Assembly (NCBI GenBank): GCA_964106915.2
Contig: OZ066914.1
From: Podarcis gaigeae
Taxonomy: Eukaryota
Strand: one strand, 5' to 3'
DNA length: 64,000 nucleotides
Made by a program: the position numbers and the translations under genes. Shown in pieces: positions 13,948-34,797 of this stretch (the first letter of the stretch is position 1; the number at the start of each line of letters is the position of its first letter). The notes beneath the pieces were generated by a model, which was given only the letters and a program-made list of their open reading frames with translations, had not been told where the DNA came from and did no database searches.

Positions 13948-14004
13948 CCCTGGAAAGAGTTCTGCAGGAGAAGATAGAACAACAGATTGAAATGGAAGTG
14001 AAAG
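13948..14004 (+). CDS. TTN: Titin exon 47
   Basis: ttacag|CC...AAAG|gtacag; 57 nt; ALERVLQEKIEQQIEMEVK resembles recalled human APESILHERIEQEIEMEMK. Confidence 0.93.
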
Positions 14005-15139: not shown

Positions 15140-18100
15140 AACTGTTCTTCGGTGAAGAGCCAGAATATGCAGAAAACCCAGCTGGCAAACAGGCTGCTTC
15201 TGCTGATTCCGTAGATCTTCCGCAACATGGATCTCTCCCGGATCTGAAGGGCACAAGTGGAATGTCATTTATGCATTCCTGGCCTGAGAAACAGAAACCT
15301 TCTTTCACACAAAAGTTAAAGTATCGGTCTGTTATGGCTGGAGAGCCAGTTGTTTTCCAGTGCAAATTGAGTGCCCTTCCTTTGCCCCAAATAACATGGT
15401 ACCATAACAACAGGCAAATCCCCCAAAGTCTGCGAAGGCGAATAAAGAGTGAGAGCTGCATGGATATGCACAGCTCCAGTCTAGAGGTAAAAGAAGTTCA
15501 GGAAAGGGACTCAGGGAGTTACAAGGTTTTTGCTATTAACAGTGAGGGTTCAGCTGAGTCCACTGCTTCATTGTTGGTAGCACATGGTGACAAACAAAAT
15601 GCCAAATACCTAGAGTTTTTGAGACAGTCAGAGAGTACTTGTGAACGTATAGAGCATCTGGTGCAGAAAAGGAGTGGCGATAGGCTCAAAGTTGATCTGC
15701 GGTGTATTGGTTCTCCGTTTGATAAGAAGCAGGAAACCGAGAAAGCGCTGAGAGCTTTTTCTCCTACCAAAGGGATGGTGAGGACCATAAGCTTTGAAAG
15801 CCTCTCGTCCTTAAGAAAAGGATTTGTATACGATAAGGATTGGGTAAGAAACAGGCGTGCAGGTAGGTGGTGTAGTGAGGGAGAGGCTTTGCTTGACGAG
15901 GAAACAAAAGTAAAGTTGCAGCGACTTCGCGAGGCAAAAAAAGCCATGCTGGAAAAGAAAAAAGTGCTTCTATCACAGGGATCGACAGAGGAACACCTTC
16001 CCTCTGCGAAAATTGTAGGAATTGGGAATAAAAGAGGCCCGTTGGCTCGTTCAATCTGTGCAGCATCTCATGTAGAGACAAAGGGACTTGCTTTCCAAAC
16101 TATAGAGCAGATTAATGAAAAGGCCATGTTACCGACAGTGTCAGGCACTAAAGAAGTTACGGTAGGAAGTTCTAGCAGGCAGCTTGAGAAAACATCAGAA
16201 AAATTTCAGGTTAGAATGGAACGGATCCTGGGCCTTCCTGGGCCTCCTCAGATTCTCCAGGATTTTCCTGATAAAAGCAATAGGGGAGGAATGTTCCGGA
16301 GACAGGAGGTAGTAGCCTCTAAAGGGAACGTGAAGCCACAAGTTCCAGAAACAGATCCAAAGGCAATCGGGAACACAAGATGGATGCACCATACTTATAC
16401 CCATGGAAAATCAGAAGAAGCAAGAATGGATACTCAAGACTTCAAGGCGACAAAAACCATTAAGAAAAACCCCTCTCCCCTGGTATATGTACTTTTGACT
16501 GATGATGTCAGTGAGAGAGAGAAGGATGATGTCAGTGTGAGAGAGAAAGATGATGTCAGTGAGAGAGGGAAACCTGACATGATGATGTCTGATACAATCA
16601 CATTGAACATTAATGAACCTGTGCCTGTTTTTGAGATCAGGGAAATGAGCAAAACTGTAGAAACGGCAATGTCAGTAAACAAATGCTCCCTTGAAACCGA
16701 AGAGTCTGTGTTGACTGAGGTCACTGAAACAGAAACGGAGATAACAGAACCACCTGACAAATTGGTGATGCCTCTTCCGAAATATCTGGAGCCATGCCCC
16801 CCTTTCTTTGTTCATGAAATTGAATCACAAGAAGTAAGCGAAGGAGAGAGCTGTATTTTTAATTGTGATTTCCAAGGCCATCCACAGGTCACTGTCACTT
16901 GGTATAACAATGACAAGCCGCTGTCACGTAACCAAGAATGTAACATCAGAACCACAGAAAATAGTTCTACACTGACATTCTCCACCATTGTCCGTGATCA
17001 GGAAGGCTCCATTACTTGTGTGATATTTAACCAGCATGGGACTGCTACAACTTCAGGAACGCTAAAATTGAAAGGAAAGGAAAAGCCTGAATTTGAACCA
17101 TTCAGTATATGTAAAGTTGAGCTTTCACCAGACTATGCAGAAGAGGAAGAGGAACTCAGTTTGGCATTTGAGTATTCAAAAAAAGATGAACCTGATTTAA
17201 GTATGGATGGCAGAGCCACTCTCCTGCCTCCACAGATTAACCTGCCCAGACCTTGCATTTCTGATCCAGATCTGCTTTCACTTCCTGTGGAAATAAAAAT
17301 AACTGCTCCAACCCCAACTCCAGAACAAGATGAAGAATTTAAAGAATTAACTCAGTTTGTTGAGTTTGTGCCTGAAGAACCCCCTGAAGAACAAACTTCT
17401 GCAGGACTAAAGCATAAGTTTAAATTTTCATTTGATGTGGCTCATGAACCCCCCAAAATCTTAAAAGAAATTCAACAACATGTTAGATGTAGAGAAGGGG
17501 ATTCGGTGGTACTTGAATGCTTAATATCTGCAGAACCACTGCCAATTGTAACATGGCTGCAGAATGATGGGATTTTAATCCCCACTGAAAAGTTTTACTT
17601 TGAGGAGGGAGATGGCGTTTATAGGTTGCACGTTTGCAAGGTTTCCATATCTGATGCTGGCACGTACAAATGTGTTGCCGAAAACAAAGCTGGCATAGTC
17701 GAAACTGTTTGTTATCTTTCAGTTGATCCCACCTTGGAAATATTTTCGGATGAAACTGAGCTCAAAGCTGTCGAAAGCCAAGTCAGAGGAACTCAGGACC
17801 AGATTGCAAAAGAACATTTGGGGAGTTATTTTGAATCCTCAGTAGGACTTACGGAAAGTAGTTTTAGCGATAAAGCATATTCTGTAAGCCAGCAGTTCCA
17901 CAGTGTTAGTAAACTGGATTTCGGAGGGGAAGAAACAGGTAGACCAGCCCAGGAAATGGAATCCCAGCTGCCAAATTATCTAAATGATGTAATGAAGTCT
18001 CTACTTGCTGATGAAAGTGAACACCCACATTTCCAGATCTGGGAGCAAAAAGAAGTATATAAAGAGATGGAGTCAAATGCAAAAGAAGAACAAAGGGTAG

Positions 18101-21100
18101 CCAGTATTTCAGAAATTTTAGCAGACACTCCACTTGTTGAGGAATTTAGAGATACAGCTGCTGAGCAAGCCAAAGTAGAAAGCACATATAAACACGCAGC
18201 CATGGAAATATCATCAAGCTGTCAATTTGAAATGGTTGTAGAGAGTCATAAGGAAAGAGAGAGGTCAGTTACAGGAGAAGACATTTCTGTAAGTCATGAT
18301 GTAAAAGATGAAGGGAAAGCTGTAAGAGACATATTTGAGAAGATGCAGAAGATTTCTAAAGATCAGGAATTCACACTAGCATATCTGGAACCAGAATCGG
18401 AGAGTCTTCAGTATGGACCAACTCAAGGTATATCACACAAGGAAATACCTTCAAGTGAGGTAATCACAGACATACCATTTAAGGAAGTTAAAGAACAAAT
18501 CTGCACTTTTGAGCAGGAGTTAAGTGCAAAAGAATCTATGGATCATAGGTTTTCCACACTGCTGCAAGAAGACAGTGATATCCATGAGAAGGATCAATGT
18601 TTTACTGATATATTAAGCAAGAATTCTCAGGATCAGTCAGCCATAGAAGAGAGAAGTATGTTACATCTGCAAAATATAAACAATGAACTCCAAAGTGCAC
18701 CTAAGGAAGAACAACTTGACAGTGAGGTTGTAAACAAAGAAAATCTGCAGGAGGCAGTAGCCAATGAACACCAAGAACTGTTCAGAGTAGAAAAAGAGCA
18801 AGCATTCAGAAGTTCTATCTCTGACAAAGAGAAAGACACTTTGATCCATGAGGAAAAGTTCACTAGCTTTGGTGAGGGGAAAGAGAAGGAAATCCATTGT
18901 GGTGAAGAATTGGTAGGAAAAGCAGATGTAAGTGTGCCTGAATTTGTATTTGATTTAAAACAAATGCTTACTATTGAAGACAACGTAGATAAGAATGCTC
19001 AAGAACAAACTGAAACTCAGGAACTCATAGGCCCAAGCTCAATTGATGGCAAACTTGATATCTCACTTGATGGAATGCCGGTTCATGCAGATACAGAAAC
19101 TGCTGATGAACAACAAAACAGACTTAAGTCAGAGGAAGTGTATGCCAAAGAAAAATGTTTGGTTTCTGAAATAATACAAGCTAATACAAACAAAATCACA
19201 GAATCAGCACAAATCGGCATATCAGCTCTAGAACAAAGATTGGATTCTAGTCAAGGTATTTCTAAAGAGGGTGAACTTGTAAAGGAAGCAAATTATGCCC
19301 AAGAAGATGCATTATGCCTAGAGAAGGAAGAATTTGGTTTACATCCAGCTTCCTTAGGCACAGAAACTGTTGTTGAGGAACGAGAGGAAATCGTTATCAA
19401 AGAACTTTCAGATTTTGAAAGAACAGACCTAGGCAAGATAATAGAAAGTGCAGAAGTAGACACATCAGCTGAGAGTTATAGCCAGGATATCAACAAAGAG
19501 AAGGAACTGGGAGAAGGAATATTTGATTTAAAACAACTTTCTCTGCATGTAGAAAATGATAGTCAAAACCAGGACAATGTCCTTGTGAAAGCTCTGCATT
19601 CCGGTTCTGAAGAAATGAAACTAGATGTCAACAAAACCCCAGAGATTGTACAATCTCCCACTTTGTTTCTAGAGCAAGGAAGAGCTTCTCAACAAGAGCT
19701 TTCCCAAGATACTGAACCAGTAAAGACAGAATATAGTTTCAAGGAAGCTATCTTATCCTTTGAAGAAGAATTTCCCTCCAAACAATCTAATTATAACATA
19801 GAAATTGTTGTTCAAAAGGAAGTTCGCATTGAGGAAAAACAGACTCATGAAAAGGATCAAGATTCTGTTTTTACTGTTCCAGACATAGAAATTATTGGGG
19901 GAAAATATGTTAAAACTGAATATTCAGTTGCTGAAAGCCTGGAAACTGACGTGGCTGAACATGCACACAAAAAATCGGATTTAGAGGTTTCTAAAGTAAA
20001 TGAAACTATAAAGGAAAAAAGTGCTGCACTGCAACAATCATTACCCCCTAAAAATGGCATTTTTGACTTAAAGCAAGCTTACTCAGATATAGAAAAAAAT
20101 AGCCACCTACCAGAGACAGAAGAAACATACTTAAAAAACCTCTATTCCGCTTCTGAAGGAGTTCAGGCTGATACACAGAGTACCATGGAAAATGCACCTC
20201 AAATAATGCATTCTTGCCAAAAAGATTCCTTCTCTTTGAAAACCATGATGGAAGAAGATAATGTTCAGGAACGTATATCCCCAGAAAACAAAGACATTGA
20301 TTTAAAATTAGCTTTTCTGAATCTAGAAAGTGTTGATCAACAGCAAAAAGAGAAGTTGCCACAGGGGCAAATACCTCTCAAATTCCTGTATTCTGCTTCA
20401 GAGGAAATGGAAGCCTTTCAAGGGCAGCAGTTGAAATCCACTGAAAGCAATGTCCTCTACAAGAGCAGCAACCACAAAGAATGCACCCTGTCCCCAGGGA
20501 AAGAACTACAAACACAAGAGCAAATGTTTGATCTGAAAGCACATGCTGCATCTTTATCACAAGGCTTTTCATTGAAGGAGGCTGAAACATTACCAGAGAA
20601 AGAAGTGGGTTCCTTTAATCTGAGGTCTGCTTTTGAGACCGTGGGTACAGAGACAGAGAGTTTCATAAAACAGCTACAGAAGGCAAGCGTACCAGAGGAA
20701 GGAGTTTCTCTAAGTGAGGAACTTCGTCAGAGCTATAAGGCGCGGCTGGAGGGAGATAATTCCCTAGAACAAAAATTACAAGCGGAAGCAGAGCTGACAG
20801 TGACACAAATACTGAAGAAGGCCTTAGAAACGATTAGCCTTTCTACTGAACAGGAGCCTGCTACAAATCGGCATTGCGATCAGGAGGGGAAAATTTCTGA
20901 GGAGGAAGTGCTTAGGATGCCAGATGAAGCCTTTCTGTGGGGGCAGCCAGAACCCATCCCTCTCAGTCAGTATTTTCAAAACCAAGTGAAAGAAACTGGT
21001 GTCCTCGAAGCGGATAGTTTCATATCTGATTTGAAGAAAGCTGCACATGGAAAGAAGCCTCAAAGCGTTCATGAAACAGGGGGAGAAAAGACACGTGCTA

Positions 21101-23550
21101 CTGAGCAAACCATTATCAAAGCGAGGAGTTCTTCCACTGAGGGGGCTACTGATATCAAGAAGCCTTTTGATAGTCAAATAATGCCTGACAAACAACCATC
21201 ATCACACAGCTCAGCCAAGGAACCCTCGTTGACCCAGTTCCTTCTTTCCTTAAAAGATGAATCACTTATAAGCCAGGGAGGTGTGACAGGAGAATGTGAA
21301 ACTACTGAATTCATGAATCCTCCTCTAGGAAATCTAACTGAAGGGGCTACCAAAGAAAGTACTCTTCATGCTCAAGAACCTCCTCCTCCTCATGAAGGAG
21401 CAGATTTCTCTCTTACAAAATATTTGCTTGCTGCCAGAGAACAGGAGATCCCAGTTGTCAGAGAGAGCTCATCCAGGACTCTGACCAGGGAGGGATCTAT
21501 CACATCCTTGGAGGTTGAAGATGTTACATTTAGCACCGTTTATGATTATTACAAGCAACAGCAAGAACTGACCCGCCCTTTTTCTCCTGAGTCAGAAATG
21601 TCTATTGATATTGACAGCATGAGCGGAGACGAAATGGGAGAGGCTGAGGGATTCTACACACCACCGTCGTCAGTGGATAATTTTGAATCTCCCATGTCTT
21701 TTGAGTCTTATCACACACCAATTGGCAACCCGGAACGATATTCTACACCTTCAGAGGAACGATACTCTACACCATCAGAGGAGCGATATTCTACACCGTC
21801 AGAGGAGCGATATTCTACACCATCAGAGGAGCGATATTCTACACCATCAGAGGAGCGATATTCTACACCATCTGCAGAGTCGAACAGAGCTTCAATGAGG
21901 TCTCCTGCAAATCTAGTGAGGGGAAGTACCCCACCAGAACATTACCAAACACCCCGTGGCTCTCGTTTGCAACACAGGAGCTCTTCTCTCGAAGAGCTAC
22001 GTGCTGAAATGTTCGGTACACCTTGTGAAGCATTGGAACCAAAGGGAAACGAAATTCCCCCTGCATTTATTAAGCCATTGACTAAAAGAAAAATCTATGA
22101 GAACACCACATTGCGTTTTATTGCCGAGGTCATAGGGATTCCCATACCTGATGTGAAATGGTATAGAAATAAGTCATTGCTTGAGCAAGATGAAAGGGTC
22201 AAAATACAAAAAGAAGGTGATGTTTGTATCTTAGAAATCCGCAACATTCAAAAAACAGATGGAGGGGAATATATGTGCCATGCAATAAATATCATAGGCG
22301 AATCCAAGAATATCGCACAAGTACAAGTGTTACCCCATGATGGAAGAGCTTTGGCTCTTCCTCCTCCAGTAACTCATCAACATGTTATAGAGTTTGATAT
22401 AGAACAAGGGTCAGCGTCACGAACACCTTCGCCTCAGGAAATTCTCCTGGAAGTAGAGCTGGATGAAACTGAGATTAAGGAATGTGAGAAGCAAGTGAAA
22501 ATAGCCACTATTCCTGAACTCACTTCTGATAATCAAAGTATGATTGTGTCTCTTGATGTTCTCCCTTTATCTCTGGTGGAACACACAACGGCTTCTTTTG
22601 GGAAAGAGAACAAAGATGTTACAATTGACTTTGAAGTCACCGAGATGCCTCCACGCTTTACCACCCCTGTCTTTGACATAGAGGTTCCAGAAAAATCTGA
22701 GGCATTGTTTCATTGTACAGTCGCGGGCTGTCCTACCCCAGTAGTGCAGTGGTTTAAGGCAAATCAGTGCATTTCTTCAGATGCTTTGAAGTACACTGTT
22801 AGAAGTGAGAATGGAAGTCATAGTCTTAAAATTCAGAATGTACAGCATTCTGATAGTGGCATGTATTTGTGTAAGGCTGTTAATGCTGTTGGAGAAGCTA
22901 TATGCAGGTGCTTGTTAGCTGTAACCGAGGGCCAAGGGGCTCTTGCAGTGACCAATGATGGAAGTCAGGCAGATTTAAGTTTGGATAGCACTAGTGGTAG
23001 GCCTCAAAAGATTGATTTGCTTGTTGATAATACTATCCAAAATGGCAACCAGACGGAAATAGAGCTGGAGTTTGAGTTTGAAGGTGACACTGATGATTCT
23101 CAGAAAGCTGTTAAATTGGTAGCTGTTACAGAACAGGAGCAGGAAGAGGAAGGAGAAGCATGTGTAAGTATTAACTTTGATGTATTTGCTGAACCATCCA
23201 AAGAAGAGCAGATTGAATTTAAAGGTGAGAGCACAGACAGCTGCAGCTTTGAATTTCAAGTTACAGAAGCACCTCCAAAGTTTATGAAACATATTTCTGA
23301 TTGTGCTTCTTTCAAGGGTACCTCTGCAAGTTTCCAGTGTTTAGTAGTTGGTTCTCCAAAACCGGCAATAAGCTGGTTTAAAAATGGGGCGTTGATTCAT
23401 GAAGAGAGATACTGTGTGGAGGAAAGTCAGGAAGGTTGTCACAGTCTGACTATAAGAAGCTTAGTCCAAACTGATGAAGGCGAGTATAAGTGTGTAGCAA
23501 CCAACAAAGCAGGGACTGCCTATAGCAGTGCTTCGTTAACAATCTGCTGA
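15140..23550 (+). CDS. TTN: Titin Novex-3 terminal exon (48), coding part, about 2803 aa, six Ig-like domains
   Basis: tttgcag|AA CTG TTC; open to TGA at 23548-23550; KPSFTQKL, INSEGSAESTASLLV and LDEETKVKLQRLREA match recalled human Novex-3; Ig-like domains start near 15295, 16798, 17449, 22057, 22648 and 23272. Confidence 0.93.
16501..16572 (+). repeat. Coding 24-nt tandem repeat x3 (DDVSEREK)
   Basis: gatgatgtcagtgagagagagaag-like unit three times. Confidence 0.9.
21733..21876 (+). repeat. Coding 24-nt tandem repeat x6 (ERYSTPSE)
   Basis: gagcgatattctacaccatcagag-like unit six times. Confidence 0.97.
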
Positions 23551-24943
23551 ACGTTCTGCTTTCAAAATGTATGTATTCTTAAAGAGACAGCACATTTGCA
23601 CCGCATTTAGAGATCCATCCTGGTAGACTATGTAGCAGTAATTTTGATGCTTCTTGTTATTTGAAGCAACCTTATGAGTGGGATTCACTGGCCCCTCCCC
23701 AAGGCTCTCCCTACTGGGAACTACTGTGGAGATGAAGTGATGCTTAGCTCTTATTACAGGCTAAGCTTCACTCAAAGCGAGTTCCATTGATCCCAACACC
23801 GTACGCATCCTTGTAATGATATCATTGTAATTGTCACCCACATGTGTACATCATCTTTGTCTGATACATGTAAATATGATTGTTTTATTTAAAAGGTGCA
23901 TTCACATTTTTGTTAAGAGGGTCTTGAAATATTTGATACCCCCTTTTTTTCTTATAACTGACTTTTTTGGAATTGTACTTTATATGCACACTGAATTTTA
24001 AACGCAGTACCAGAAAAAAAATGAGGATTTCCCTCTCGCAATGTTGTATCAGAAAATAACATTCTCTCTTGAACAGATCCTGAAATCATATGTTATTTCT
24101 CTCCCACTGAAGTAACTGAGACTTATGTTGATCTCATTCCAATTCAAATGAAGAGTATTAACATGACACCAGTTGAAATACCCTGATTCAAAGAGAATCA
24201 GAGACCAAATTGGCCCGTTTGGGTTTTCTGTCACAGTGGAGATTGCAGAAAAAACTTTCAGATTTATTTTTCTTTTACCAAGTTAAAACTACCTGTTAAC
24301 TAGAGAAAAAGCAATGCAAAACAGGCAAATATGCTAATGTGAACCTAGCATAAATAAAATATATTGAAATTAAACTTCTTAGAGATGGTTACACTTTAGG
24401 TGGGTCAATTAATCTCTAGCAATGGATAAAATGAAACAGAACCCTGAAATCCATCTCAAGCCAAGGCCTTGATAGCCAACATTTTTTTCAAAATACAATT
24501 CTTTATCGAGGGATATTCATGTTATTCTGTTACAGCAAAATAGTAGTCTTGCGAACCTTCAAAGGCTAGCAAATTTATTATGTCACATTCACACAAAAAA
24601 TATACCATAATAAATTTGATAGTCTTTCAAGTATCATAAAACTCTTTGCTGTTTTTAAACTTCTGTCATCATAGACTAGAAGAAGTATGAATTTAAAACC
24701 ATGTTTTTCAGTATATGAACAGACATGAATATTGTCCACTGTACAAATTTCATTCAGTAAAATGTTTTGTGCTGTGGTTGCATGCAAGCTTAGCTGGGAC
24801 CAAATCCCATTGGAGACAATGGGGTTTTACTCCTGAGTAAACATGCCTAGGTTTGGGACTCTAAGGCTGCAGTTCCAGACCCTATATGTCTGAGAGAAAA
24901 CCTAAATCAACGCAATGGGGCTTACCTCCAAGTTGATCTGTAT

Positions 24944-25129
24944 CATAGGAGCCAACTCCTAGGGGCTGAGCTCCTTTCGCCCTCCCGTATGTTATTTGAG
25001 GGGGTTGGTGGCTCTTCAAAGTTGATGGGCATTGCCATTTAAATGGGCGGGTGTGCCATGTCTTGTGATCAATTATGTGGGGTGAGGCTTACCTACCCCC
25101 TCAATATTTTATTCAAGATGGCACCCCTG
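24944..25129. mobile_element. hAT-type MITE
   Basis: Imperfect TIRs CATAGGAGCCAACT / AGATGGCACCCCTG; 8-bp TSD ATCTGTAT / ATCCGTAT. Confidence 0.65.
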
Positions 25130-25396
25130 ATCCGTATAGGACTTCACTCCCTGTGTATATGAAAAAAAGAAAAAGAAAATACATAGGTAATCTAGTCACT
25201 ATTGTGATCAGCACCAAAAGCACATTCTCTAACTCTGACATATTGATAAATGAGAATAGCCTTTTAACACTAGAAAAGAATACACCACTTGACTCTGAGA
25301 CAGCTACCTTTAAATATGAAACTGTACTTTTGAGAGTTCCTGCTTTATATTATTTTCAACACTGATATTTAAAAGAAGCATGATAATTTATACTTA

Positions 25397-25402
25397 AATA
25401 AA
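25397..25402 (+). terminator. Candidate poly(A) signal for the Novex-3 transcript
   Basis: AATAAA followed by U/GU-rich sequence; alternatives at 24353, 24609 and 26723. Confidence 0.3.
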
Positions 25403-25612
25403 TTGGTGCATTTATATTCTCAGTTGTGCACATGCATGCTCTTATTTCTATATTTATGTGCTCAGTCTTTCATCAAAAATCTGTGGCTTTAGGCTCCACA
25501 TAATCCCAAAACTGATGCTATATTACTAGGAATTGCTGAAGTTCCCAAATATGTTAGAATTACTCTTCAAAATATAGAGCAGGTCATGTAAAAAAAAAAA
25601 GAGACACCCTGT

Positions 25613-25714
25613 AAATATGCCCGCCCCATACCATCGACTTTTATCTGTGGTTCTCATCACAGAATCTTACATTGGGCAAAGACAGAAGCTTTGCTTCGAA
25701 ACGCAGAGCTACTT
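25613..25714 (+). repeat. About 100-bp direct repeat, copy 1 (copy 2 at 27521-27622)
   Basis: Shared ttatctgtggtt..cagaatcttacat.gggcaaagac..aagctttgcttcgaaac. Confidence 0.9.
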
Positions 25715-27237
25715 GCCCGAGACATGCATAACATGTTTTGTCAAATAGCTTGGGTGATCTGTGGAAGGCAGCCTGTATGGCTCCTTTATCACAGGATCCT
25801 CAGAACGGAAATCTCGCCGCCACTGATTTCAAAATTACAAGTTTGATTCTGTTTCCAGCCAAGCCATTTTCAGTCTCAGTTGACTAGAAATTTCAAACAG
25901 TTTAGACACCTGGTAACATACTAGGCATTTATATGTAAAAACTAAGGAAAGAAGTAAAAGGGGGGGAGGGTGTTTCCTTTTGGAAACACTAAACTGATAC
26001 AATGGATATCACAGGGTATTTCAGCACTCTCAACGTGCTGACAGTAGGCATTAAAATAATTTGCATGGCAGTTAAAATGTTTCAATAGTGTAAGAGTATA
26101 AGAGAAATGAAATTTCTGATCCAACATTGAGCTGGGTAGAAATTGCTCATAGCATTGTGTCCATTGTCATTCCCGATATAGTTGACTAGCAGTTTTGGAG
26201 CAAATGAAGTGCAGCTATCCCAGCATATATGAGAAAAGGCATTGAATGTATTATATGGTCTGATGCTATCAGAAAGCCCACAGAAGTTCAGCCACCATAT
26301 CTGACCTTTCACACTCACTTCCAGCTTGTAGTATCTTTGCATTCACTTTATCTGTGGCCTGATCCTGTAAATCCAAACCGTTGGTTACGGTCAAAATCAT
26401 GGCCAAGCAGTTGTGATGAAAGCAAAGACTGGCAGCTACACCTGTAGCATTGCATGCAACTATGCCCTACTCAGAGTTGACCCATTTAAATTAATGGATG
26501 TAATTTAGTCATACCCATTAATTTCAGTTGGCTCTAAGTAGGACTAATGTTGGCTACAATTCCCATCTTCCAAAGCTAGCATTTAAGCTATACACTTTTC
26601 CAGTATCAACTCAGATGTCTTTTTTCATAGTTACAGGGTATTTTAAAAAAAAAGAGGAACGAAAGAGCTTTATTTGTTCATATTTGATGTTACATTTTAA
26701 ATGTCAATGTATATATTGTTTTAATAAAAGTTCAAAATACAGTACTCGACTTTGGTTTCGTATTCTTCATTGAGCATACATTGATGAATTAATTATCGAC
26801 CTTTAAACAATGGTGGTATGTATGTGAAGGTCATAACCTTTATGCCCATCCTTCTAGACATATGAAACTAGAAACACATAATTTTTTCTAGAGTTGAACA
26901 GAGGGTGGGATGTTGGGAAAGTTCTCTTTGTAACTGTCAAACAAAGAACAGTTAACTTACTCTGGCATTTAAATTTAAAAGCATGTACCAGTCATTTGCA
27001 CACATGCTCAATTAATCATGAGTAGACAGCTGCAGTGTTCTAACAGAGTACTTTAAATGTTTGTAGGGGAAATGTAATGTTGCATACCTGCAGTTTAAAG
27101 CCCCAAATGTATAGAGGCCTCCCTAGAACCTTGAAGGTACAGAAGACTCCCATGGTTCTCTGTGACAGAGACAAAGAAAATTCTGTGCTGCCAGGGATTC
27201 TTCCCCCCCCCCCTAGTTTTTAGGTAGAGCTATATCA

Positions 27238-27350
27238 TTTGATTGATTGATTGATTGATTTAAATTTGTATACCGCCCTATGCCTGCAGGTCTCAGGGCA
27301 GTTACAACATAATATCACAATAATATAAAAACACAAAATACATAATAAAA
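27238..27350 (-). mobile_element. (GATT)n tail plus LINE-like 3' end fragment
   Basis: ttgattgatt..tttgtataccgccct..ctcagggcagttacaac is a typical squamate retroposon 3' end (from memory). Confidence 0.5.
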
Positions 27351-27520
27351 AAAGAAACAGAAAATATCTTTATTGCACCACTTGACCTGGAAGTAATAGC
27401 TGTATAGTCCTCCTCATATCATAGTTTAACCATTTGTGGATCTTAATTGCCATTTTAGAAAAAGGGAGGAATTTGTAGTATTTAGTGTGGCAAAATTGAG
27501 TGGTTTTGTAAAAGTCCCGA

Positions 27521-27622
27521 AAACATGTCCGCCTCCATACCATCAACTTTATCTGTGGTTATCATTGCAGAATCTTACATAGGGCAAAGACGAAAGCTTT
27601 GCTTCGAAACACTGAGCTGCTT
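27521..27622 (+). repeat. About 100-bp direct repeat, copy 2, flanked by a 32-bp duplication
   Basis: Flanks at 27469-27500 and 27640-27671: gaatttgtagtatt(t/a)agtgtggcaaaa(t/g)tgag. Confidence 0.9.
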
Positions 27623-28089
27623 TGTTTTGTAGTTTTGTAGAATTTGTAGTATTAAGTGTGGCAAAAGTGAGGGCATGGATTAGGAAGTCAATATCTAACT
27701 GATCCATGCCCCCATTGGAAAGGGCATAAGAAAGGATGGCAACCAATTGGTGGGGAAAGCCAAATTGTTTCCTGACTGCTTGTCTGCCTGGCACAGTGTA
27801 TGTGGACCATTTGTGGACCACAGAGCAGCCTTAGGTCTTCTGATCAAGAGCTGAGAACCACGTGGCCTCTGAGTATTAAGAAGATGAATGTTTTCCTTCC
27901 AGAGGAAGGCTATACTACCTAGGATACCTTATATGATCAAATACCTCTGGGTAGAGAAAGAAACACTGGCACTATCAATACTGAACCATATGGTTGATGG
28001 TCCGACTTGGCACAAAATAGTTGTCTGTGTCTTTGACTTGGAACTAATTTTTGCTGGCTGAGCTCTAGAACATCCTGCCTTAGGGCTAA

Positions 28090-28178
28090 TATTGTATTTT
28101 AATATTCTGTTGGAAGCCACCCAGAATGGCTGGGGAAACCCAGCCAGATGGGTGGGGTATAAATAAATTATTATTATT
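28090..28178 (+). mobile_element. LINE-like 3' end with (ATT)n tail
   Basis: gaagccacccagaatggctggggaaacccagccagatgggtggggtataaataaattattattatt. Confidence 0.55.
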
Positions 28179-29094
28179 TCCAACACCATAATTCTATGTT
28201 TCTACTGAATGGCATGAAGTGGAGTGCATTAGTTGTGCTTGACTGTTTAATTCAGTTGAAATGAATGGGATTTATGGTTCATTGATTTCAATGGGACTTA
28301 AGCATCAACCCCCCCCCCCGGATTGGTGCTGTATAATCAGTAGCACCATTTCAGTGAATACCTTTTATTTCACTTACCATCCTACACCTCAGACCACATT
28401 ACTTTTTCAGATATAAAACAGCCCCATAAAGCAAATCCAATAAGAATAATTGTTGAATCTACCTCCAGGTGTTAAGTGTACTTTAAGTCACACAAAAAAT
28501 ACGTAGAAGATTATATACCAGTGTAAAAAATTATTACAGGTTTAATATTTATTATTGTGTGATATGTTACTGAATCCCTAACCCAATTAATATTCTCTTT
28601 ATGACTTTATGACTTGGAGTGAGATTTCCTTTTCCATTAATAGAAGGGTTCCTTTCTTCTGCAGAAGTTTCTCTGTTCCAATAGAGGATCCCGCTGACAG
28701 AAAATGTGAGAGATAATTTTTGTGGATGCCTCCTTCCCCTTGCATTCTCATGCCACAGGAGGGTTCCCCAAATTTGCCAGAGCAAATTTTCAGGGGGATG
28801 CAGGGTGAAGCAGCAAAATTTTCCTTTTCTTCCTTCTGTCAGCAGGAACACCCCATCATGAGCATTCAGCTCATGGATCTGCAGTACCAATTTTTTTAAG
28901 GGAGTATTTAAATCATCAAACATTTATTGCAGACTCTTGTATCTTCCAGATCAACTTTCCTCAGCCTGGTATCCTCCATATTTCTGAGGCTCTCAGTTCC
29001 CATCTTCCCTGACCGACAGCCATACTGGTTGGAGCAGATGGAAATTGTAGTCCAAAACATCTGTAGAATAGCAGGAGAGGGAAGACTGCCCTTG

Positions 29095-29190
29095 ATGGGG
29101 AACTTGTGGCCCTCCAGACTTTGCTAGATTTCAATTCCCATCAGTCCCAGCCACAATGGCTAATGTTCTAGAATGATGGGAGCTGTGATT
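29095..29190. mobile_element. hAT-type MITE fragment
   Basis: gatggggaacttgtggccctccaga..caattcccatcagtcccagcc..gatgggagctgtg. Confidence 0.5.
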
Positions 29191-29330
29191 TTGCTTTTTT
29201 AGTACTAATGGAAAAGTGAACATCTGAGTCTGTCTATACATATTAAACACCAACCCATATATCTGAGATGTATTATGCCTTCAGTTTATATGCAGATATT
29301 CCCCAATATTCATGCACTGATTAAATGGGA

Positions 29331-29568
29331 AATTGTACCTTGGTACTTGGTTCCCAAACAAATCAACTCCCAAACGCCGCAAACCTGAAAAGTGTACTGG
29401 GTTACAAATGTTTTTCGGAAGCCTAATGTCCGATGTGACAGACAAGTGGCTTCCGATTGGCTCTTCTGATTGCAAGAGCCAATCAGACGCTGTGCCTTGG
29501 AAATTGAACGTTTCGGAAATTGAATATCCTTCTGGAATGGATTACGTTCAACTTCTGAGGTATCACTG
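29331..29568. mobile_element. Tc1/mariner (Tigger-like) non-autonomous element remnant
   Basis: Ends GAGGTATCACTG+TA (Tigger-like TIR, TA target); internal gattggctctt..aagagccaatc hairpin; left end uncertain. Confidence 0.5.
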
Positions 29569-29762
29569 TATAAACTGAATCCTAAAATAATGTCCACCCT
29601 TTGATTCAAGGTATATTTTAAAATATATGAATGTTTTAATCATCTTGCAGCATTACGAAGTGTTGTCCTAACATGATAATTGATTGATAGTATCTGGTAG
29701 ATACAAGATGAATTTTTCAAGAAAGCATTTTAGTAAAATGTAAATAATTTTTCCCCATACAG

Positions 29763-32700
29763 AGATTTCTAGCTCTATTATTGTGTCTTCTGAGGAAGAA
29801 AGAACTGAGAGTTACACCAGCGGCCTACAATTATGTGATAGAGATAAAACACTTGAACTCATGCCTGAAAATCCAGTTTATTCTAGCAGTTTAGAGGTGA
29901 AAAGGGAGAAGAGCAATGTCCCAACCTTCCTCAAGCATGTGTCAAATGTTGAAATAAGTTTAGGAGATTTAGCTAGACTTTCTGTTGTAGTTACTGGGGA
30001 TCCAAAACCACAGATACAATGGTATTTCAATAGTGTTAAGCTGACATCATCTGCAGACTATAAGTTTGTGTTTGATGATGAAAACTATAGCCTCATTATT
30101 CTCTCCACAACATTTGACCATGAAGGGGAATATACTTGCATTGCTAGTAATATCCATGGAGAGACAGCCTGCTCTGCTTATCTGAAGGTCAATCCTAAGG
30201 GAGATGAAAGGGAACTGGAGGCAGAATTCACTGCAGAGAAGACAGGAAGTCCTCAACCTCCATATTTTGTTAGGAAGCTAGACCCTGTTCAGTGTGCTCA
30301 AGGTGCTCCTGCTGTGTTTGAGTACAAAGTGGCTGGGGATCCACCTCCAGAGATTCAGTGGTTTAGGGGAAACAACCAGATTTTCTCCTGTGCACGATAC
30401 ACTATCATTCATAATCGAGATGGTTCTGGGTCACTAATGGTGAATAACTGCCAGGGGGCCGATGGTGGCTTATACATCTGTAAGGGAATCAACCTCATAG
30501 GTGAAGCCTCTAGCAGTGCAGAACTTCTTGTTCTCTTAGACGTGCCTAGGGAGGCTCCATATAAGGAAAAGAAGAGTAAACAGAAAACACGCACCAAGTC
30601 ATATAAAGAAACTGTAAGTGACGAGGCTACTGTCTCACGGATATATGCCGTTAAACTGCCTGGTGATGATAGGCACGATGGGCAGCATGTGATGTATACA
30701 ATTGGAACTGAAGATAGGCATTCACTACATAGTGAAGAGGTAGATGTTTTGCAGGTGGCTTCCTACTCAACAGCTACTGTACAGCAGGAAGCCCTTCTGA
30801 CCCAACAAGTAGCCTTGCTTGAGTCTCACAAAGTTGGAGAAATTGCAGATCCATCTTCTCAGACCAATGAAAAGGTGGCTTCTTCAGCTTTTACCACAGG
30901 TGAGGTGAAGGAGCACCCCGGTTTCCTAGAGCAACACTCTGAACCAATTCAAAGCCCACCAATAGTCGAATTGCCGGGTTCCTGGTGCCACCAAGTTTCT
31001 GACCTCTGTTTACCTGTTGTGGAGGAAATAAACCAAGAAGACAAAGAAAAGGGGCTGCAAACCAAGCTTCCAGAAATGGTCAGGCCAACATCAGCCATAG
31101 AGCAAACATCTCAGTTTGCCTCCATTCTATCTGAGGAGAAATATGTGGTAAGCCCCGGTGAGTCTGTTGTATTCTCAGTCCCAGGAGCTGAGGAAGTTAT
31201 TGAAACCAGTGAGCCTAAACATGCAGTATGTGTTCCTAGAATTGAGGGCATCCAAGAATTGTCCAAGGAAAGTTCTTTGGCAGACCACACACACAAGTGG
31301 GAGAATATCACACCAGCTAAAGAACGAGGCAGCTTTTTTCAATCTGCTGTAGCAGCAGAACAATGCAAAATAAGTGAAGCTCATGCTGAGGCAATCGATT
31401 ATGCTGATTCACCTGCAGAAGTTAGTCATACCCAAGAATCATCCAATGTATTACATGTGGCTATGATTGCCTCTGAACAGATGTTCCCCAAAGAGTCCGC
31501 CTTTGATGCAACCACTGCAGAGCAGCAGAAGGGCTCACTGGAACAGGGCAGGCTCGTCCAAACAGCTCTGGTTGCTGAAGAAAAGCAGCAGCTCTCTGAT
31601 GAACACACTGAGGACCTTCCCAGGTTAGACTACACGGTGGTAGCAGAAATCCAAAGAGAGGGTGAAAAGCCACTGCATTTGCCTGTTGTACATGGACAAG
31701 GCTCGCTTCCTAGAGAAGAGCATTTTAATTCTGAGGTGCCCCTGGAAGATGAGGCACTGTCTAGGAAAAGCCCATGTTTGCTACACTGCTTAGTAACAGA
31801 AGAACAAGTCTCCACCTCTTGTGAAGATGCTAAGCACTTTCCTCCTCTGGCAGAGGCAGTTAGCATTCAGGTCACCCAGGAGCCCATTTCTGTGTTGCAT
31901 CTCCAAATGAGCCAAACTGAGCAAGTGTTGCCTAAGGAAGGCATCTTGGCTGTACAAGAACCCGAACCCCAAAATGCTTTGCAGAAAGCTGAAATAATGC
32001 TCAAACGTTCTGTGGCGTCTGAGGAAAAAAACCAGATAGCTGTTGAGGCCCTAGAGGCTTTTCAGAGTGACATTGCTGGAGAATACCCTGTGGCTAAAGC
32101 AGAGCCTCAGCTTCGTAAGTGTCTGACCACTGTGGCTGAGGAGATGCTTCTGCCCAAAGAGGAAATCCTCCCCAAAGCAGGAAAAGAGCAGAAAGCTACC
32201 CTGAGGAAGGAAGACTTTCAACCAGTGATGCAGGTATCTGATGTGACTGAAGAGAGGGTCTTGGATGTAGGACATGCTGAGCCATTTGAGGCTGTTCAGC
32301 CCATGAGTTGTGAGGTGGTGTCTGAGCCCAGGGTGCCTTCAGAATCCACCTGCGTTGAGGAGCAAGGTGTTCCGATAGAGAGCATCGATCTCTTGGAAGC
32401 CACAGAGCAAGAATTTGCAGCCCGCATCCAAGAAGGTCAGTCAGTCAGGCTCCCATTGTTATTGGAGGAAAAACAGCCATTAAAGGAAGAGCACTTGGAC
32501 AAGATCGCAAGGCCAGATGCTGAGAACGCAACAGCCCAAAAGCAACTGGGGCTGCTTATGGATGTGCCTGAAACATGGGAAAACAAAGTGCTTCGGAAAG
32601 AAGAAGAACTTGCAGCTGAGACTCCAGTATGTTGTAGCTTAGATATGAAGGCTCAGATCAGAAGGGCCCTGAAAGTAGCTCTGACAAATGAACAGCACTT

Positions 32701-33626
32701 ATTTCCATTGGATGCTTTCGATGATATTGAGAGCGTTCAATTGAAGACTGTAACAGTGATCAAAGAATCTCAACATGCAACATGCACTTGCCTTATAATC
32801 TTGGAAAGTTCCAATACTGCAGAAATAACTCTCTCTCTAGATGGAATATATTCTCAGACAGCTGATTTCAAAAGTGAATTGCAAGCTGCTGTTCACTCTA
32901 TTATTTATGAAGAGAAACATGTTCTGACAGCAGAGGAACCCAGTGCCATAGCAGAACCTAAACACCACAAGTTGCTTACTTCTTGTTCACCTTCCAAACT
33001 AATGCAGTCTGCTACTGTAACTGAGACACCTGTTCAGCAACAATCTGTCAGTAATATTATTGGTTCACCCGAGCTACATCATGCTTACCTGAGTACTGAA
33101 TCAGAAATACAGGAGGAGCAACTTGTGTCTATTCAAGAAGTCCAAACTATTGCTCTCAGTGAGCACATTAAAGATGTAGGTACAACCACACTCACCCTTG
33201 ATATTCCTGTAGCAGCAGCCCCAGTTGAGAGGTTAATAGATGCTCTAAAAGTGAAAGAGAGAAAGGAAGAACTTTTTGAGGAAAATGAAGAGGAGGCACA
33301 TGTAGTTAAGGCTAGCAAACAAGAAGACAGTCTAGCGAGCAGGGGTTGTCCCATCATGCGCCAAAGTTTTATAGACACTGTTGTTGAAGAAGGTGACAGC
33401 GTAAGTCTTACTTCCATTATAGAAAATGTTAAAGTGGTGAATTGGTATTTTGGGGATAAGCTGGTATCTTCAGGAAATGAGTTCAAGTGCTTGCAAGACC
33501 ATGACACATACACACTAGTAATCAACCAAGCATTCAAGGAAGTGCATCAAGGAGAGTACACCTGTGAGGCTCTGAATGAAGGTGGAAAAACAACAGCAGC
33601 AGCGAAACTCACAGTTGTAAAAAGAG
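29763..33626 (+). CDS. TTN: Titin N2B exon (49): Ig I24, I25, N2B unique sequence, Ig I26; 1288 aa
   Basis: catacag|AG...AGAG|gttgga; 3864 nt, phase 1-1; ADYKFVFD, YTIIHN and KCLQDHDTYTLVI...AKLTVVKR match recalled human N2B. Confidence 0.95.
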
Positions 33627-34023
33627 GTTGGAATATGGGGATAAAATATTGCTTTCCTATTTTCACTCATTTGCTAACTGAATAGAACACACATATACAT
33701 ATTTGTATCTCTAGTAGCATTTTGGATACAGATATAAGAAGTATATAAACTTCAGCTGTGCATCACCAAACTAATCACACTTTTTGTTTCCTCTTTAGAA
33801 CTTTTATTTCTTTAAATATATTTCTTATTCACACCTTTTATTTGCATTTTGCACTTTTTGGTACTGAAACAAAATTAACTTTTGTTTCATGAATGATGAT
33901 TGTAAAATAAAACTATTTGTATATTTCAGATTTTTTTTAAAAGAGTGCATGTCTTAGGAGCACTTTCATCCCCATATCCACAGAGCAACTTGGTTCACTT
34001 TTCCTTTTCATTGCTACAATAAA

Positions 34024-34110
34024 GATGCAATCCTGAACACGCTTACTAGGGCGGAAGCCCCACTGAGCACAGTGAGACTTGCTTCTGAGTAGACGTGCCA
34101 AGAGATTGCA
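34024..34110. mobile_element. Short hairpin-type squamate repeat (MITE-like)
   Basis: tgcaatcct..aagccccactgagcacagtgagactt..gattgca; related copies near 24790, 38570 and 43360. Confidence 0.5.
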
Positions 34111-34518
34111 CAGCACGTTGTAGAAGTCATTGCACCATTCTAGCATAATGTCACACATTTCATGTTGAAAATGTTCTGGTACAACCTGGTATAATTTCAT
34201 ATATCATGTTGTTTGCATGCCTTTAGTAGTAAGTAGCACATCAGAGTATCTTCAGAGTTCCATTATGCACTGCAATGTATGTAGCCCTCTGGTAGACTGA
34301 GCACTGCTTTCGGTTTGCTTTCACCTCTGACAACCATTTTTCTTTACAGCCACTTTCCTTGGATAGCTCATGAAACCACACATCTCATTTCTGTTGGTCA
34401 CTTTATTAACAGTGTTTTGGAATGTACACTTATAAGCACCATACATGCTATTAGTATTACAATATCCACATAAACATGGGTGGTTGTAACCACATTATTC
34501 TTTGACTTTTAACTTCAG

Positions 34519-34797
34519 TTGGACCCATACTGAGGAGAAGGCTGGAATCCCAAGAAGTCGCTGTGAACCACCTTGCCAAGTTCACCTGCGAGATCGAGAT
34601 GGCGCCAGACGTACGGTTTCAATGGTACAGAGCCGGTCGGGAAATCTATGATGGCGACAAGTATACCATACACACCGCTAATTATACATCCACTCTTCAA
34701 ATCCCGAGACCGCAAGTAGTTGACTGTGGTGAATACAGCTGCAAAGCTTCCAATAAGTATGGCAGCGTAAGCAGCAAAGCAACCTTAACGGTAACTG
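34519..34797 (+). CDS. TTN: Titin exon 50 (Ig I27)
   Basis: ttcag|TT...CTG|gtaagt; 279 nt; HLAKFTCEIEMAPDVRFQW. Confidence 0.96.

What the first reader, a model, noticed from the sequence alone, without database searches (positions are those of the whole stretch)
30540..33345. The N2B 'unique sequence' is a hidden tandem array of 74-aa (222-nt) repeats, expanded relative to human
Seen: two motifs recur at a near-exact 222-nt period. Motif A, with the first acidic-pair codon at 31133 (ILSEEKY), 31355 (AVAAEQC), 31577 (LVAEEKQ), 31799 (LVTEEQV), 32021 (VASEEKN), 32249 (DVTEERV, +6), 32465 (LLLEEKQ), 32687 (ALTNEQH) and 32909 (IIYEEKH). Motif B starts at 31037 (EDKE), 31259 (LSKE), 31484 (FPKE), 31706 (LPRE), 31928 (LPKE), 32150 (LPKE), 32369 (VPIE), 32591 (LRKE) and 32813 (NTAE). 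That gives at least 9 degenerate units. Known (from memory): the human N2B exon is 927 aa with a 572-aa spring usually described as non-repetitive and disordered. This exon is 1288 aa, and the 361-aa surplus is close to 5 x 74. The extra sequence appears to lie on the N-terminal side. Inference: the cardiac N2B spring is modular and its length is tuned by repeat copy number. The conserved spacing hints at repeated binding sites or residual structure, and a longer spring would suit a compliant ectotherm heart.
Basis: partly seen in the sequence, partly recalled or inferred. Interest (0 to 1): 0.8.

Follow-up and report, generated by a model that had tools for sequence, protein, structure and literature searches.

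The report
Ancient 74-residue repeats in titin N2B spring
The "unique", supposedly non-repetitive spring segment of heart titin in this lizard is nine tandem 74-residue repeats that date back at least to the common ancestor of sharks and bony vertebrates; the lizard did not expand them, because birds and mammals each lost the front part of the array on their own.

Summary
**Observation: confirmed.** All 18 motif positions are present and in frame.
- Protein autocorrelation at lag 74 gives z = 8.4-9.9; the shuffle maximum is 4.3-4.7.
- Profiles of the orthologous units match each other at full length and in register, with E down to 5e-13.

**Interpretation: partly right.**
- The array is nine units, u01-u09, at window 31037-33034, plus a possible degenerate remnant upstream.
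- It is old, not a lizard expansion. Skate, ray-finned fish, frogs and lizards carry the same nine units one-to-one.
- u02-u08 has about ten times fewer indels than the flanking spring sequence, a rate like that of an Ig domain.
- Birds lost about 397 residues and mammals about 351, both at the N-terminal side. The breakpoints differ, so the two losses were independent.
- These lineages show no copy-number tuning and no change by whole units.

**Other results**
- The last 1.5 units match the alpha/beta structural domain reported in human N2B-us (PMC11530556), and AlphaFold2 reproduces it here.
- Each 74-residue unit looks like a duplicated 37-residue module.
- Spliced contigs from two related species carry the whole 3864-nt exon.
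- I found no paper or Pfam model that describes these repeats. A long reptile N2B was already known.

The scan had noted this same stretch once before.

The parts
29763..33626 (+). Titin N2B exon (human exon-49 equivalent), 3864 nt = 1288 codons, phase 1-1
   Evidence: Spliced contigs from runs X1, X3 and X5 lie on 29761-33626 without gaps. They continue into window 13976-14004 upstream and 34519 onwards downstream. AG at 29761-62, GT at 33627-28. A single ORF covers it.
29921..30190 (+). First Ig (I-set) domain of the exon
   Evidence: Pfam I-set on ORF aa 47-136, E 6e-55 for the protein
30275..30532 (+). Second Ig domain of the exon (approximate limits)
   Evidence: Pfam I-set/Ig_3 report 3 stretches, and V-set lies on ORF aa 199-250. 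It aligns to the second Ig of the orthologues.
30545..31036 (+). Pre-array part of the unique sequence (ORF aa 255-418). It holds a conserved helix (aa 318-353) and a possible degenerate unit remnant (aa 297-348, nt 30671-30826). The 'u00' slot (30815-31036) is not supported as a unit.
   Evidence: The unit HMM hits aa 297-348 with iE 3.5e-6. hhalign gives no support for pre1 or u00. AF2 predicts a helix at aa 318-353 with pLDDT up to 78. This region is indel-rich, at 2.2-2.8 events per 100 aa.
31037..31258 (+). Repeat unit u01 (ORF aa 419-492)
   Evidence: hhalign u01-u08 E 2.8e-6, in register. Leave-one-out: 0 of 300 shuffles reach it.
31259..31483 (+). Repeat unit u02 (aa 493-567, 75 aa)
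   Evidence: hhalign u02-u03 E 2.4e-11 and u02-u07 E 1.9e-7
31484..31705 (+). Repeat unit u03 (aa 568-641)
   Evidence: hhalign u03-u04 E 5.1e-13 and u03-u05 E 1e-10. AF2 helix at aa 569-607, pLDDT up to 81.
31706..31927 (+). Repeat unit u04 (aa 642-715). The bird deletion ends 12 aa into this unit.
   Evidence: hhalign u04-u05 E 4.6e-8. Bird breakpoint mapped.
31928..32149 (+). Repeat unit u05 (aa 716-789)
   Evidence: hhalign u05-u06 E 1e-7. AF2 helix at aa 728-758.
32150..32368 (+). Repeat unit u06 (aa 790-862, 73 aa)
   Evidence: hhalign u05-u06 E 1e-7 and u03-u06 E 1.5e-5
32369..32590 (+). Repeat unit u07 (aa 863-936)
   Evidence: hhalign u02-u07 E 1.9e-7. AF2 helix at aa 868-894.
32591..32812 (+). 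Repeat unit u08 (aa 937-1010)
   Evidence: hhalign u08-u09 E 1e-6 and u01-u08 E 2.8e-6
32813..33034 (+). Repeat unit u09 (aa 1011-1084)
   Evidence: hhalign u08-u09 E 1e-6 and u07-u09 E 2.8e-5
32636..32935 (+). Alpha/beta structural domain (helix, three strands, helix). It spans u08 position 16 to u09 position 41, ORF aa 952-1051.
   Evidence: AF2 predicts H952-969, E985-994, E998-1007, E1010-1020 and H1026-1051, with pLDDT 53-70. The topology and homologous sequence match the 115-aa domain shown by experiment in human N2B-us (PMC11530556).
33035..33349 (+). Non-repetitive, acidic, indel-rich C-terminal tail of the unique sequence. The 'u10' slot is not supported.
   Evidence: hhalign and leave-one-out give no support for u10. 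Indel rate is 3.0-3.6 events per 100 aa.
33350..33616 (+). Third Ig domain of the exon
   Evidence: Pfam Ig_2 on ORF aa 1190-1278

Best explanation
The stretch is the unique sequence of the titin N2B exon of a squamate.

**Shown**
- Its core, ORF aa 419-1084, is nine tandem copies of a 74-residue unit. The consensus is roughly LPKE..L, then A....LhS.v.EEK..L..EH...L, then kEPK..LhLqvI.
- The array was already complete in the common ancestor of cartilaginous and bony vertebrates. Since then each unit has evolved as its own orthologue, with no homogenisation.
- In skate, ray-finned fish, frogs and squamates the number and exact length of units u02-u08 have been held almost free of indels, even though sequence identity is only about 30%.
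- Birds removed the pre-array segment plus u00-u03 and 12 aa of u04, as a single block of about 397 aa.
- Mammals removed the pre-array segment plus u00-u02 (about 309 aa) and a second 42-aa block across the u03/u04 boundary.
- These are two independent truncations of the N-terminal end of the array in the two endotherm lineages.

**Probable:** each 74-residue unit is itself a duplicated 37-residue module.

**Inferred**
- Units u01-u07 act as a mostly disordered entropic spring with a helix-prone segment in each unit. Their contour length is set by residue number: 666 aa x 0.38 nm is about 250 nm for the nine units.
- The periodically spaced short motifs are multivalent docking sites for LIM-domain partners such as FHL1 and FHL2.
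- u08 and u09 make the force-sensitive alpha/beta domain.
- Shortening the array by 130-150 nm of contour length stiffens the cardiac spring in birds and mammals.
For: **Periodicity and unit homology**
- Lag-74 autocorrelation z = 8.4-9.9.
- Profile-profile matches between units are full length and at offset 0, with E from 5e-13 to 3e-6. They link all of u01-u09.
- The unit HMM hits only this exon in six-frame translations of the 64-kb window.

**Age and orthology**
- Lag 74 is the top or a near-top lag in most orthologues analysed on their own.
- Lizard unit k is the best match of unit k in skate (8/9), salmonid (9/9) and two amphibians (7/9 and 8/9).
- Named anchors: Phrynosoma, Leptodactylus, Rhinoraja, Salvelinus, galliform birds and Castor.

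**Length constraint**
- u02-u08 has 0.18-0.20 indel events per 100 aa. The flanking unique sequence has 2.2-3.6 at equal identity.
- ORF aa 558-800 (243 aa) corresponds to 242-244 aa in 22 of 24 ectotherm orthologues.

**Losses**
- Breakpoints were mapped with an HMM of the ectotherm exons.
- The unit HMM, trained without birds or mammals, finds 5.5-6 units at 68-75-aa steps in a galliform, the beaver and a second mammal.
- P0010, sister to birds in the tree, still has the full array.

**Half-unit:** hhalign of half A against half B gives E = 8e-5 in register. The score is 14.2 against 2.7 +/- 1.0 for column shuffles.

**Structure**
- AF2 reproduces the alpha/beta domain in u08-u09 and places helices at equivalent unit positions in seven units.
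- PMC11530556 shows the human domain by experiment. It also predicts 24 FHL2 sites, 13-14 of them in N2B-us aa 79-308. By beaver coordinates that region is u04-u07.

**Expression:** spliced contigs from two related species contain the whole exon with no internal joint.
Against: - Most orthologues are unnamed ORFs from Logan assemblies. Their class was inferred from a gene tree with six named anchors, and that tree misplaces mammals next to birds.
- u00, u10 and the upstream remnant are not established as units, so the original copy number (9, 10 or 11) is open.
- The 37-aa half-unit rests on moderate statistics.
- AF2 gives low confidence: mean pLDDT is 41 for the whole unique sequence and 52 for u03-u05 alone. 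It shows no fold for the middle units, so it cannot explain the strict length conservation.
- The mapping of FHL2 sites to the repeat register is only at region level. No list of sites was available.
- No mechanical or binding data exist for any non-mammalian N2B-us.
- The tissue of the RNA-like runs is unknown, and they come from related species, not from this genome's own animal.
Confidence: 0.85

Rival explanations
1. One reading: the array was expanded in this lizard or in ectotherms by added copies, and spring length is tuned by changing the copy number.
For: The lizard exon (1288 codons) is about 350-430 aa longer than the mammal and bird exons, which are 857-942 aa. The difference lies at the N-terminal side.
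Against: Skate, teleosts, frogs and squamates have the same nine units one-to-one. No sampled lineage has extra units. There is no DNA-level similarity between units, and the lag-222 signal is strongest at codon position 2. The bird and mammal gaps are not whole-unit multiples and have different breakpoints.
Confidence: 0.03
2. The periodicity is a chance or compositional artefact of an acidic, low-complexity disordered region.
For: Sequence identity between units within this one species is low (13-16% at lag 74). TRF finds nothing.
Against: z = 8.4-9.9 is specific to lag 74 and its harmonics, while lags 72 and 76 are negative. The same lag appears independently in most orthologues. Profile matches are full length and at offset 0, with E down to 5e-13.
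Confidence: 0.01
3. The array is, or originally was, a chain of folded alpha/beta modules like the u08-u09 domain. Each three-stranded sheet would be packed between the helix of its own unit and that of the next. On this view it is not an entropic coil, and the strict 74-residue register reflects a fold.
For: u08-u09 are homologous to the other units and form a folded domain (PMC11530556). The indel rate of u02-u08 equals that of an Ig domain. Helices recur at the same unit positions. The conserved hydrophobic positions 1, 7, 38, 46, 64-69 include positions 1, 7 and 64-69, which fall on the strand positions of the domain.
Against: AF2 with orthologue alignments predicts no sheet and low confidence for u01-u07 in the whole unique sequence. 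It predicts none for u03-u05 alone either: pLDDT 52, pTM 0.14. In human, deleting the 115-aa domain removed the only unfolding step (PMC11530556). However, mammals have lost or shortened the earlier units.
Confidence: 0.15
4. The length and register constraint comes from a periodic partner rather than from spring mechanics or a fold. The 74-residue (or 37-residue) spacing would match repeated binding of LIM-domain proteins, small heat-shock proteins or a filament lattice.
For: A few positions per unit are nearly invariant (E4 95%, E34 76%, E59 75%), while the rest drift. Multivalent FHL2 binding is predicted and measured along the human N2B-us (PMC11530556). The pull-down region aa 79-308 coincides with u04-u07.
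Against: No site-level mapping was possible. Birds and mammals tolerate the loss of four to five units. No partner with a matching period is known to me.
Confidence: 0.3

Closest known systems
Titin N2B element (human exon 49: I24-I25 Ig domains, N2B-us, I26) and its 572-aa unique sequence
   Same: The architecture is the same: Ig, Ig, long acidic unique sequence and Ig, all in one exon. It sits after a Novex-3-type exon. The gene is orthologous by sequence.
   Different: The lizard unique sequence is about 940 aa and keeps the complete nine-unit array. In the literature I could search, the human unique sequence is described as non-repetitive and mostly disordered. By homology (beaver, P0019) the mammalian version keeps only parts of u03 and u04 plus u05-u09.
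The 115-aa alpha/beta structural domain of human N2B-us (Sun et al., Nat Commun 2024, PMC11530556)
   Same: AF2 gives the same helix, three strands, helix topology in the homologous lizard sequence, ORF aa 952-1051.
   Different: That paper treats the domain as an isolated island in disordered sequence. Here it turns out to be the last 1.5 copies of the repeat family (u08 position about 10-16 to u09 position about 41-52).
Titin PEVK segment (26-28-residue PPAK repeats and poly-E motifs) and the 45-residue Z-repeats
   Same: These are tandem-repeat segments of titin outside the Ig and Fn3 domains. PEVK is likewise an entropic spring whose length sets passive stiffness.
   Different: PEVK units are short and lie one per exon. 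Their number varies by splicing and between species. The N2B units are 74 aa (2 x 37), all in one exon, fixed in number and length for more than 400 million years, and unrelated in sequence. The unit HMM hits nothing else in the window, and no Pfam family matches the unique sequence.
Long N2B element of the turtle heart (Honda et al. 2018, cited in PMC11033294)
   Same: A reptile N2B element of about 1300 aa against 876 aa in rat, linked to a more compliant ventricle.
   Different: As cited, that work reports only lengths. It does not report a repeat architecture, orthology of units, or the separate bird and mammal truncations.

Membership tests
Titin N2B exon / N2B element | One large exon encoding Ig, Ig, long unique sequence and Ig | tested here: met
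   Single ORF. Pfam I-set/Ig hits lie at ORF aa 47-136, about 165-250 and 1190-1278, with nothing between them. Exon limits come from spliced contigs.
Titin N2B exon / N2B element | Orthology to titin N2B exons of other vertebrates | tested here: met
   Only 33 hits in 1.84 billion representatives, all N2B-exon-type ORFs. Named members are titin-like proteins of Leptodactylus, Rhinoraja, Salvelinus and Castor, a Phrynosoma Ig-domain protein, and galliform bird proteins.
Titin N2B exon / N2B element | Position downstream of the Novex-3 exon, with splicing from the preceding Ig exon to the following Ig exon | tested here: met
   Contigs join window 14004 to 29763 and 33626 to 34519. They skip the 2762-aa ORF at 15262-23550.
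Titin N2B exon / N2B element | Heart-specific inclusion | not testable with these tools
   The tissue of runs X1, X3 and X5 is not given.
Titin N2B exon / N2B element | Contains the alpha/beta structural domain of N2B-us | tested here: met
   AF2 predicts helix, three strands, helix at ORF aa 952-1051, with pLDDT 53-70. The sequence is homologous to the human domain printed in PMC11530556.
Tandem-repeat protein region | Three or more adjacent units that are demonstrably homologous and in register | tested here: met
   Nine units are linked by hhalign at offset 0, with E from 5e-13 to 3e-6. Autocorrelation z = 8.4-9.9.
   One-to-one orthology from skate to lizard. Deletions have non-unit sizes and breakpoints.
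PEVK / PPAK repeats | 26-28-residue P/E/V/K-rich units, one per small exon | tested here: not met
   The unit is 74 aa, lies in one exon, and has a different consensus. No Pfam match to the unique sequence at E up to 1.

The most novel reading that the evidence does not exclude
The core of the cardiac N2B 'unique sequence' is not a featureless entropic coil. It would be an 18 x 37 (9 x 74)-residue repeat scaffold whose register has been held as strictly as a folded domain for more than 400 million years. The reason would be that it either folds into serial alpha/beta modules like its last 1.5 units, or binds a periodic partner. Birds and mammals would each have cut away its front half independently as their hearts became stiffer and higher-pressure.
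Probability: 0.3. Interest if true: 0.8.

Novelty: new member of a known kind. Interest (0 to 1): 0.6.

Why it matters
N2B-us is one of the three springs that set the passive stiffness of heart muscle. It is also a signalling hub for FHL1/2, ERK2, PKA/PKG and small heat-shock proteins, and a site of cardiomyopathy variants. It is normally treated as a unique, non-repetitive, disordered sequence.

Seeing it as nine ancient units gives three things:
- **A coordinate system.** Phosphosites, cysteines, FHL sites and the 2024 structural domain can all be placed on unit and position, and compared across species.
- **A puzzle that can be tested.** The array has Ig-like intolerance to indels in a region that is predicted to be disordered.
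- **A natural experiment.** Two independent N-terminal truncations occurred in the two endotherm lineages, which can be tested against ventricular stiffness.

Tried and rejected
- **DNA-level repeat detection.** TRF and seed-based direct repeats found nothing relevant. The signal is at the protein level only.
- **Global-mode hhalign.** It under-called the weaker unit pairs. Local mode showed they are full length and in register.
- **Cyclic-rotation test of the unit profile.** It was uninformative, because gapped global alignment absorbs small rotations (last lines).
- **u00, u10 and the pre-array segment as units.** They are not supported by hhalign or leave-one-out. Only a weak HMM hit at ORF aa 297-348 remains.
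- **Pfam on the unique sequence.** No family at E up to 1.
- **PDB sequence search.** No hit at E up to 0.1.
- **Foldseek of the AF2 model against PDB.** Only noise, with E above 0.01 and rmsd 9-11 Å.
- **AF2 of u03-u05 alone.** No fold.
- **Organism names for the Logan ORFs.** The look-up of encoding contigs gives only a run accession, so classes were inferred from a tree with named anchors. The first tree script failed to return.
- **List of FHL2 sites.** It is not in the text or the held supplements of PMC11530556, so sites could not be mapped to the unit register.
- **Human sequence.** The sequence printed in that paper was read by eye only and was not sent to any tool. Mammals are represented by the beaver protein P0090 and by P0019, P0015 and P0022.
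- **Literature.** Seven full-text searches found no description of repeats within N2B-us. Subscription-only papers, such as early interspecies surveys of I-band titin, could not be searched.
Full report
**What is there**

Window 29783-33685(+) is one 1300-codon ORF. Its translation reads Ig, Ig, about 940 residues of acidic unique sequence, then Ig. This is the layout of the titin N2B exon.

Contigs from three runs of two closely related species are 97-98% identical to the window. They lie on 29761-33626 without any gap. They then continue into sequence that matches window 13976-14004 upstream and 34519 onwards downstream. With the AG at 29761-62, the GT at 33627-28 and the upstream donor at 14005, the exon is 29763-33626.

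These contigs are therefore spliced transcripts. They include the whole exon and skip the 2762-codon Novex-3-type ORF at 15262-23550. Consistent with that, the best named relative here is Phrynosoma at 63% identity.

**Check of the observation**

- BLOSUM62 autocorrelation of the unique sequence peaks sharply at lag 74. The z-score is 8.4 over ORF aa 255-1190 and 9.9 over aa 401-1070.
- Harmonics appear at 148, 221/222 and 296, while lags 72 and 76 are negative. No shuffle exceeded z of about 4.7.
- At the nucleotide level, lag 222 gives 34% identity against 27% (z = 6.4). The excess is strongest at codon position 2.
- TRF and seed-based repeat finding see nothing.

The repeat is real, old, and preserved at the protein level.

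**Extent of the array**

In this one species, leave-one-out HMMs support seven units clearly, and u00 and u08 marginally. u04 fails that single-species test, and u10 also fails.

I then collected 30-odd orthologous exons and built one profile per orthologous unit. Local hhalign links all of u01-u09 through full-length alignments at offset 0:

| Unit pair | E-value |
|---|---|
| u03-u04 | 5e-13 |
| u02-u03 | 2e-11 |
| u03-u05 | 1e-10 |
| u04-u05 | 5e-8 |
| u05-u06 | 1e-7 |
| u02-u07 | 2e-7 |
| u08-u09 | 1e-6 |
| u01-u08 | 3e-6 |

The slots u00 and u10 and the pre-array segment are not supported as units. A family HMM does give a weak hit at ORF aa 297-348 (iE 3.5e-6), which may be a decayed earlier unit. 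The supported array is nine units, window 31037-33034.

The consensus has near-invariant E at positions 4, 34 and 59, and hydrophobic positions at 1, 7, 38, 46 and 64-69. The first and second halves of the unit profile match each other in register. E is 8e-5, and the score is 14.2 against 2.7 +/- 1.0 for column shuffles. Lags 37 and 111 also appear in many species. A 74-residue unit made of two 37-residue modules is probable.

**Age and direction of change**

The periodicity is visible independently in most orthologues. In a joint alignment, units u02-u08 are each 74 +/- 1 residues in a skate (Rhinoraja), ray-finned fishes (including Salvelinus), frogs (Leptodactylus) and squamates.

Unit-by-unit scoring puts lizard unit k against unit k of the skate, salmonid and two amphibians as the best match. 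The counts are 8/9, 9/9, 7/9 and 8/9, and diagonal scores are several times the off-diagonal ones. So the nine-unit array predates the split of cartilaginous and bony vertebrates, and it has not been homogenised or expanded since. The lizard carries the ancestral form.

Birds (galliform cluster, 857-917-aa ORFs) lack ORF aa 257-653 of the lizard as one clean block. Mammals (beaver P0090, P0019) lack about aa 257-565 and aa 624-665, and they keep a recognisable piece of u03. The breakpoints differ. A GC-rich exon that is sister to birds in the tree still has the full array. Squamates, which are closer to birds than to mammals, are also complete. The two truncations are therefore independent.

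A unit HMM trained without birds or mammals still finds 5.5-6 units at 68-75-aa steps in them. By homology the mammalian unique sequence is therefore also made of these repeats, although its own lag-74 signal is weak. That weakness may be why the repeats were overlooked.

None of the gaps is a whole number of units.

**An unexpected constraint**

Against the lizard, u02-u08 (518 aa) shows 0.18-0.20 indel events per 100 aa. The unique sequence on either side shows 2.2-3.6 at the same identity (30-37%). The third Ig domain shows 0.28-0.31.

Independently of any alignment, ORF aa 558-800 (243 aa) corresponds to 242-244 residues in 22 of 24 ectotherm orthologues. Successive HMM hits also step by 72-75 residues in the skate. 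A random-coil spring should tolerate indels, and this one has not.

**Structure and link to known work**

PMC11530556 (2024) showed, by AlphaFold2 and magnetic tweezers, that human N2B-us contains a 115-aa alpha/beta domain at N2B-us aa 354-468. The domain unfolds at a few pN. The same paper predicted 24 FHL2 LIM-binding peptides, 13-14 of them within aa 79-308. It does not mention sequence repeats.

AlphaFold2 on the lizard unique sequence, with the orthologue alignment, has low confidence overall (mean pLDDT 41). It still reproduces that helix, three strands, helix domain at ORF aa 952-1051, which is u08 position 16 to u09 position 41. It also places helices at equivalent positions (about 13-40) of u02, u03, u04, u05 and u07.

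In the beaver the domain starts at unit position 10 of u08. The FHL2 pull-down region corresponds to u04-u07. This assumes near-collinearity with human.

A separate AF2 run on u03-u05 gave no fold, only one helix. There are no PDB relatives by sequence or by fold.

**Mechanism**

*Shown:* an ancient, orthologously conserved 9 x 74-residue array. Its last 1.5 units form the known folded domain. Independent N-terminal losses occurred in birds and in mammals. The full exon is included in transcripts of related lizards.

*Inferred:* u01-u07 act as a mainly disordered spring with one helix-prone segment per unit and regularly spaced short motifs that dock LIM-domain partners. Contour length scales with residue number, about 250 nm for the array at 0.38 nm per residue. 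The bird and mammal losses remove roughly 150 and 130 nm, which should stiffen the spring at a given sarcomere length. The idea that a long reptile N2B goes with a compliant ventricle is already published for the turtle (PMC11033294, citing Honda et al. 2018).

*Unexplained:* the strict length conservation. A periodic partner and cryptic folding are the two candidate reasons.

**Novelty**

No Pfam model covers the unique sequence. Seven full-text searches found no description of internal repeats in N2B-us, and the 2021 N2B review does not mention any. Older subscription papers could not be searched, so a prior mention cannot be excluded. I put that chance at about one in five.

The element itself is well known. 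What is new is:
- its repeat architecture;
- its age and one-to-one orthology;
- the indel intolerance;
- placing the 2024 structural domain inside the repeat family;
- the two independent truncations.

**Limits**

- Most orthologues are unnamed ORFs from public assemblies, and their classes rest on six named anchors and a gene tree.
- No human sequence was put into any tool.
The exon was searched on its own.
- The RNA-like runs are contigs of related species and of unknown tissue.

Noticed in passing
window 15262-23550 (+): A 2762-codon ORF lies between the upstream Ig exon (which ends at 14004) and the N2B exon. It is a Novex-3-type giant exon. The spliced contigs that contain the N2B exon skip it.
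   Followed up: partly
P0022 (unnamed Logan ORF, 720 aa): A mammal-like N2B exon that is shorter still. It lacks u03-u06 as well and keeps only u07-u09 of the array, so some mammal has a much shorter N2B spring.
   Followed up: partly
P0010 (unnamed Logan ORF, 997 aa, N-terminally cut): A very GC-, Ala- and Arg-rich N2B exon. It is sister to birds in the gene tree yet keeps the complete array. It may be a crocodilian or turtle. It dates the bird truncation to after that split.
   Followed up: partly
P0004 (Leptodactylus fuscus titin-like, 1042 aa): The frog protein lacks the second Ig domain of the exon (6 of 86 aligned residues) and parts of u01 and u02. This may be a real deletion or an annotation artefact.
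   Followed up: no
window 29346-29571 and 34055-34094: The intron flanks of the N2B exon carry short high-copy repeats. Contig depth is 500-2600 there, against 51 over the exon, in the run that holds the window (X7). Many unrelated contigs end there.
   Followed up: no
window 30734-30841 (ORF aa 318-353): A conserved helix upstream of the array. It is among the more confident elements of the AF2 model (pLDDT up to 78), and the unit HMM weakly hits the same region. Birds and mammals have lost it.
   Followed up: partly
window 31706-31927 (u04), alignment A2 columns about 120-126: A cysteine is conserved across most fishes and squamates in the helix-prone part of u04 (TSCED / VTCED). This may be relevant to the known redox stiffening of N2B-us.
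   Followed up: no
squamate orthologues P0043, P0044, P0045, P0001: Within squamates there are lineage-specific deletions in u03/u04: 33 aa in P0043, and 38 + 25 aa in P0044. There are also deletions in the pre-array segment (P0001, P0045). The 33-aa and 38-aa ones are near the 37-aa half-unit size.
   Followed up: no
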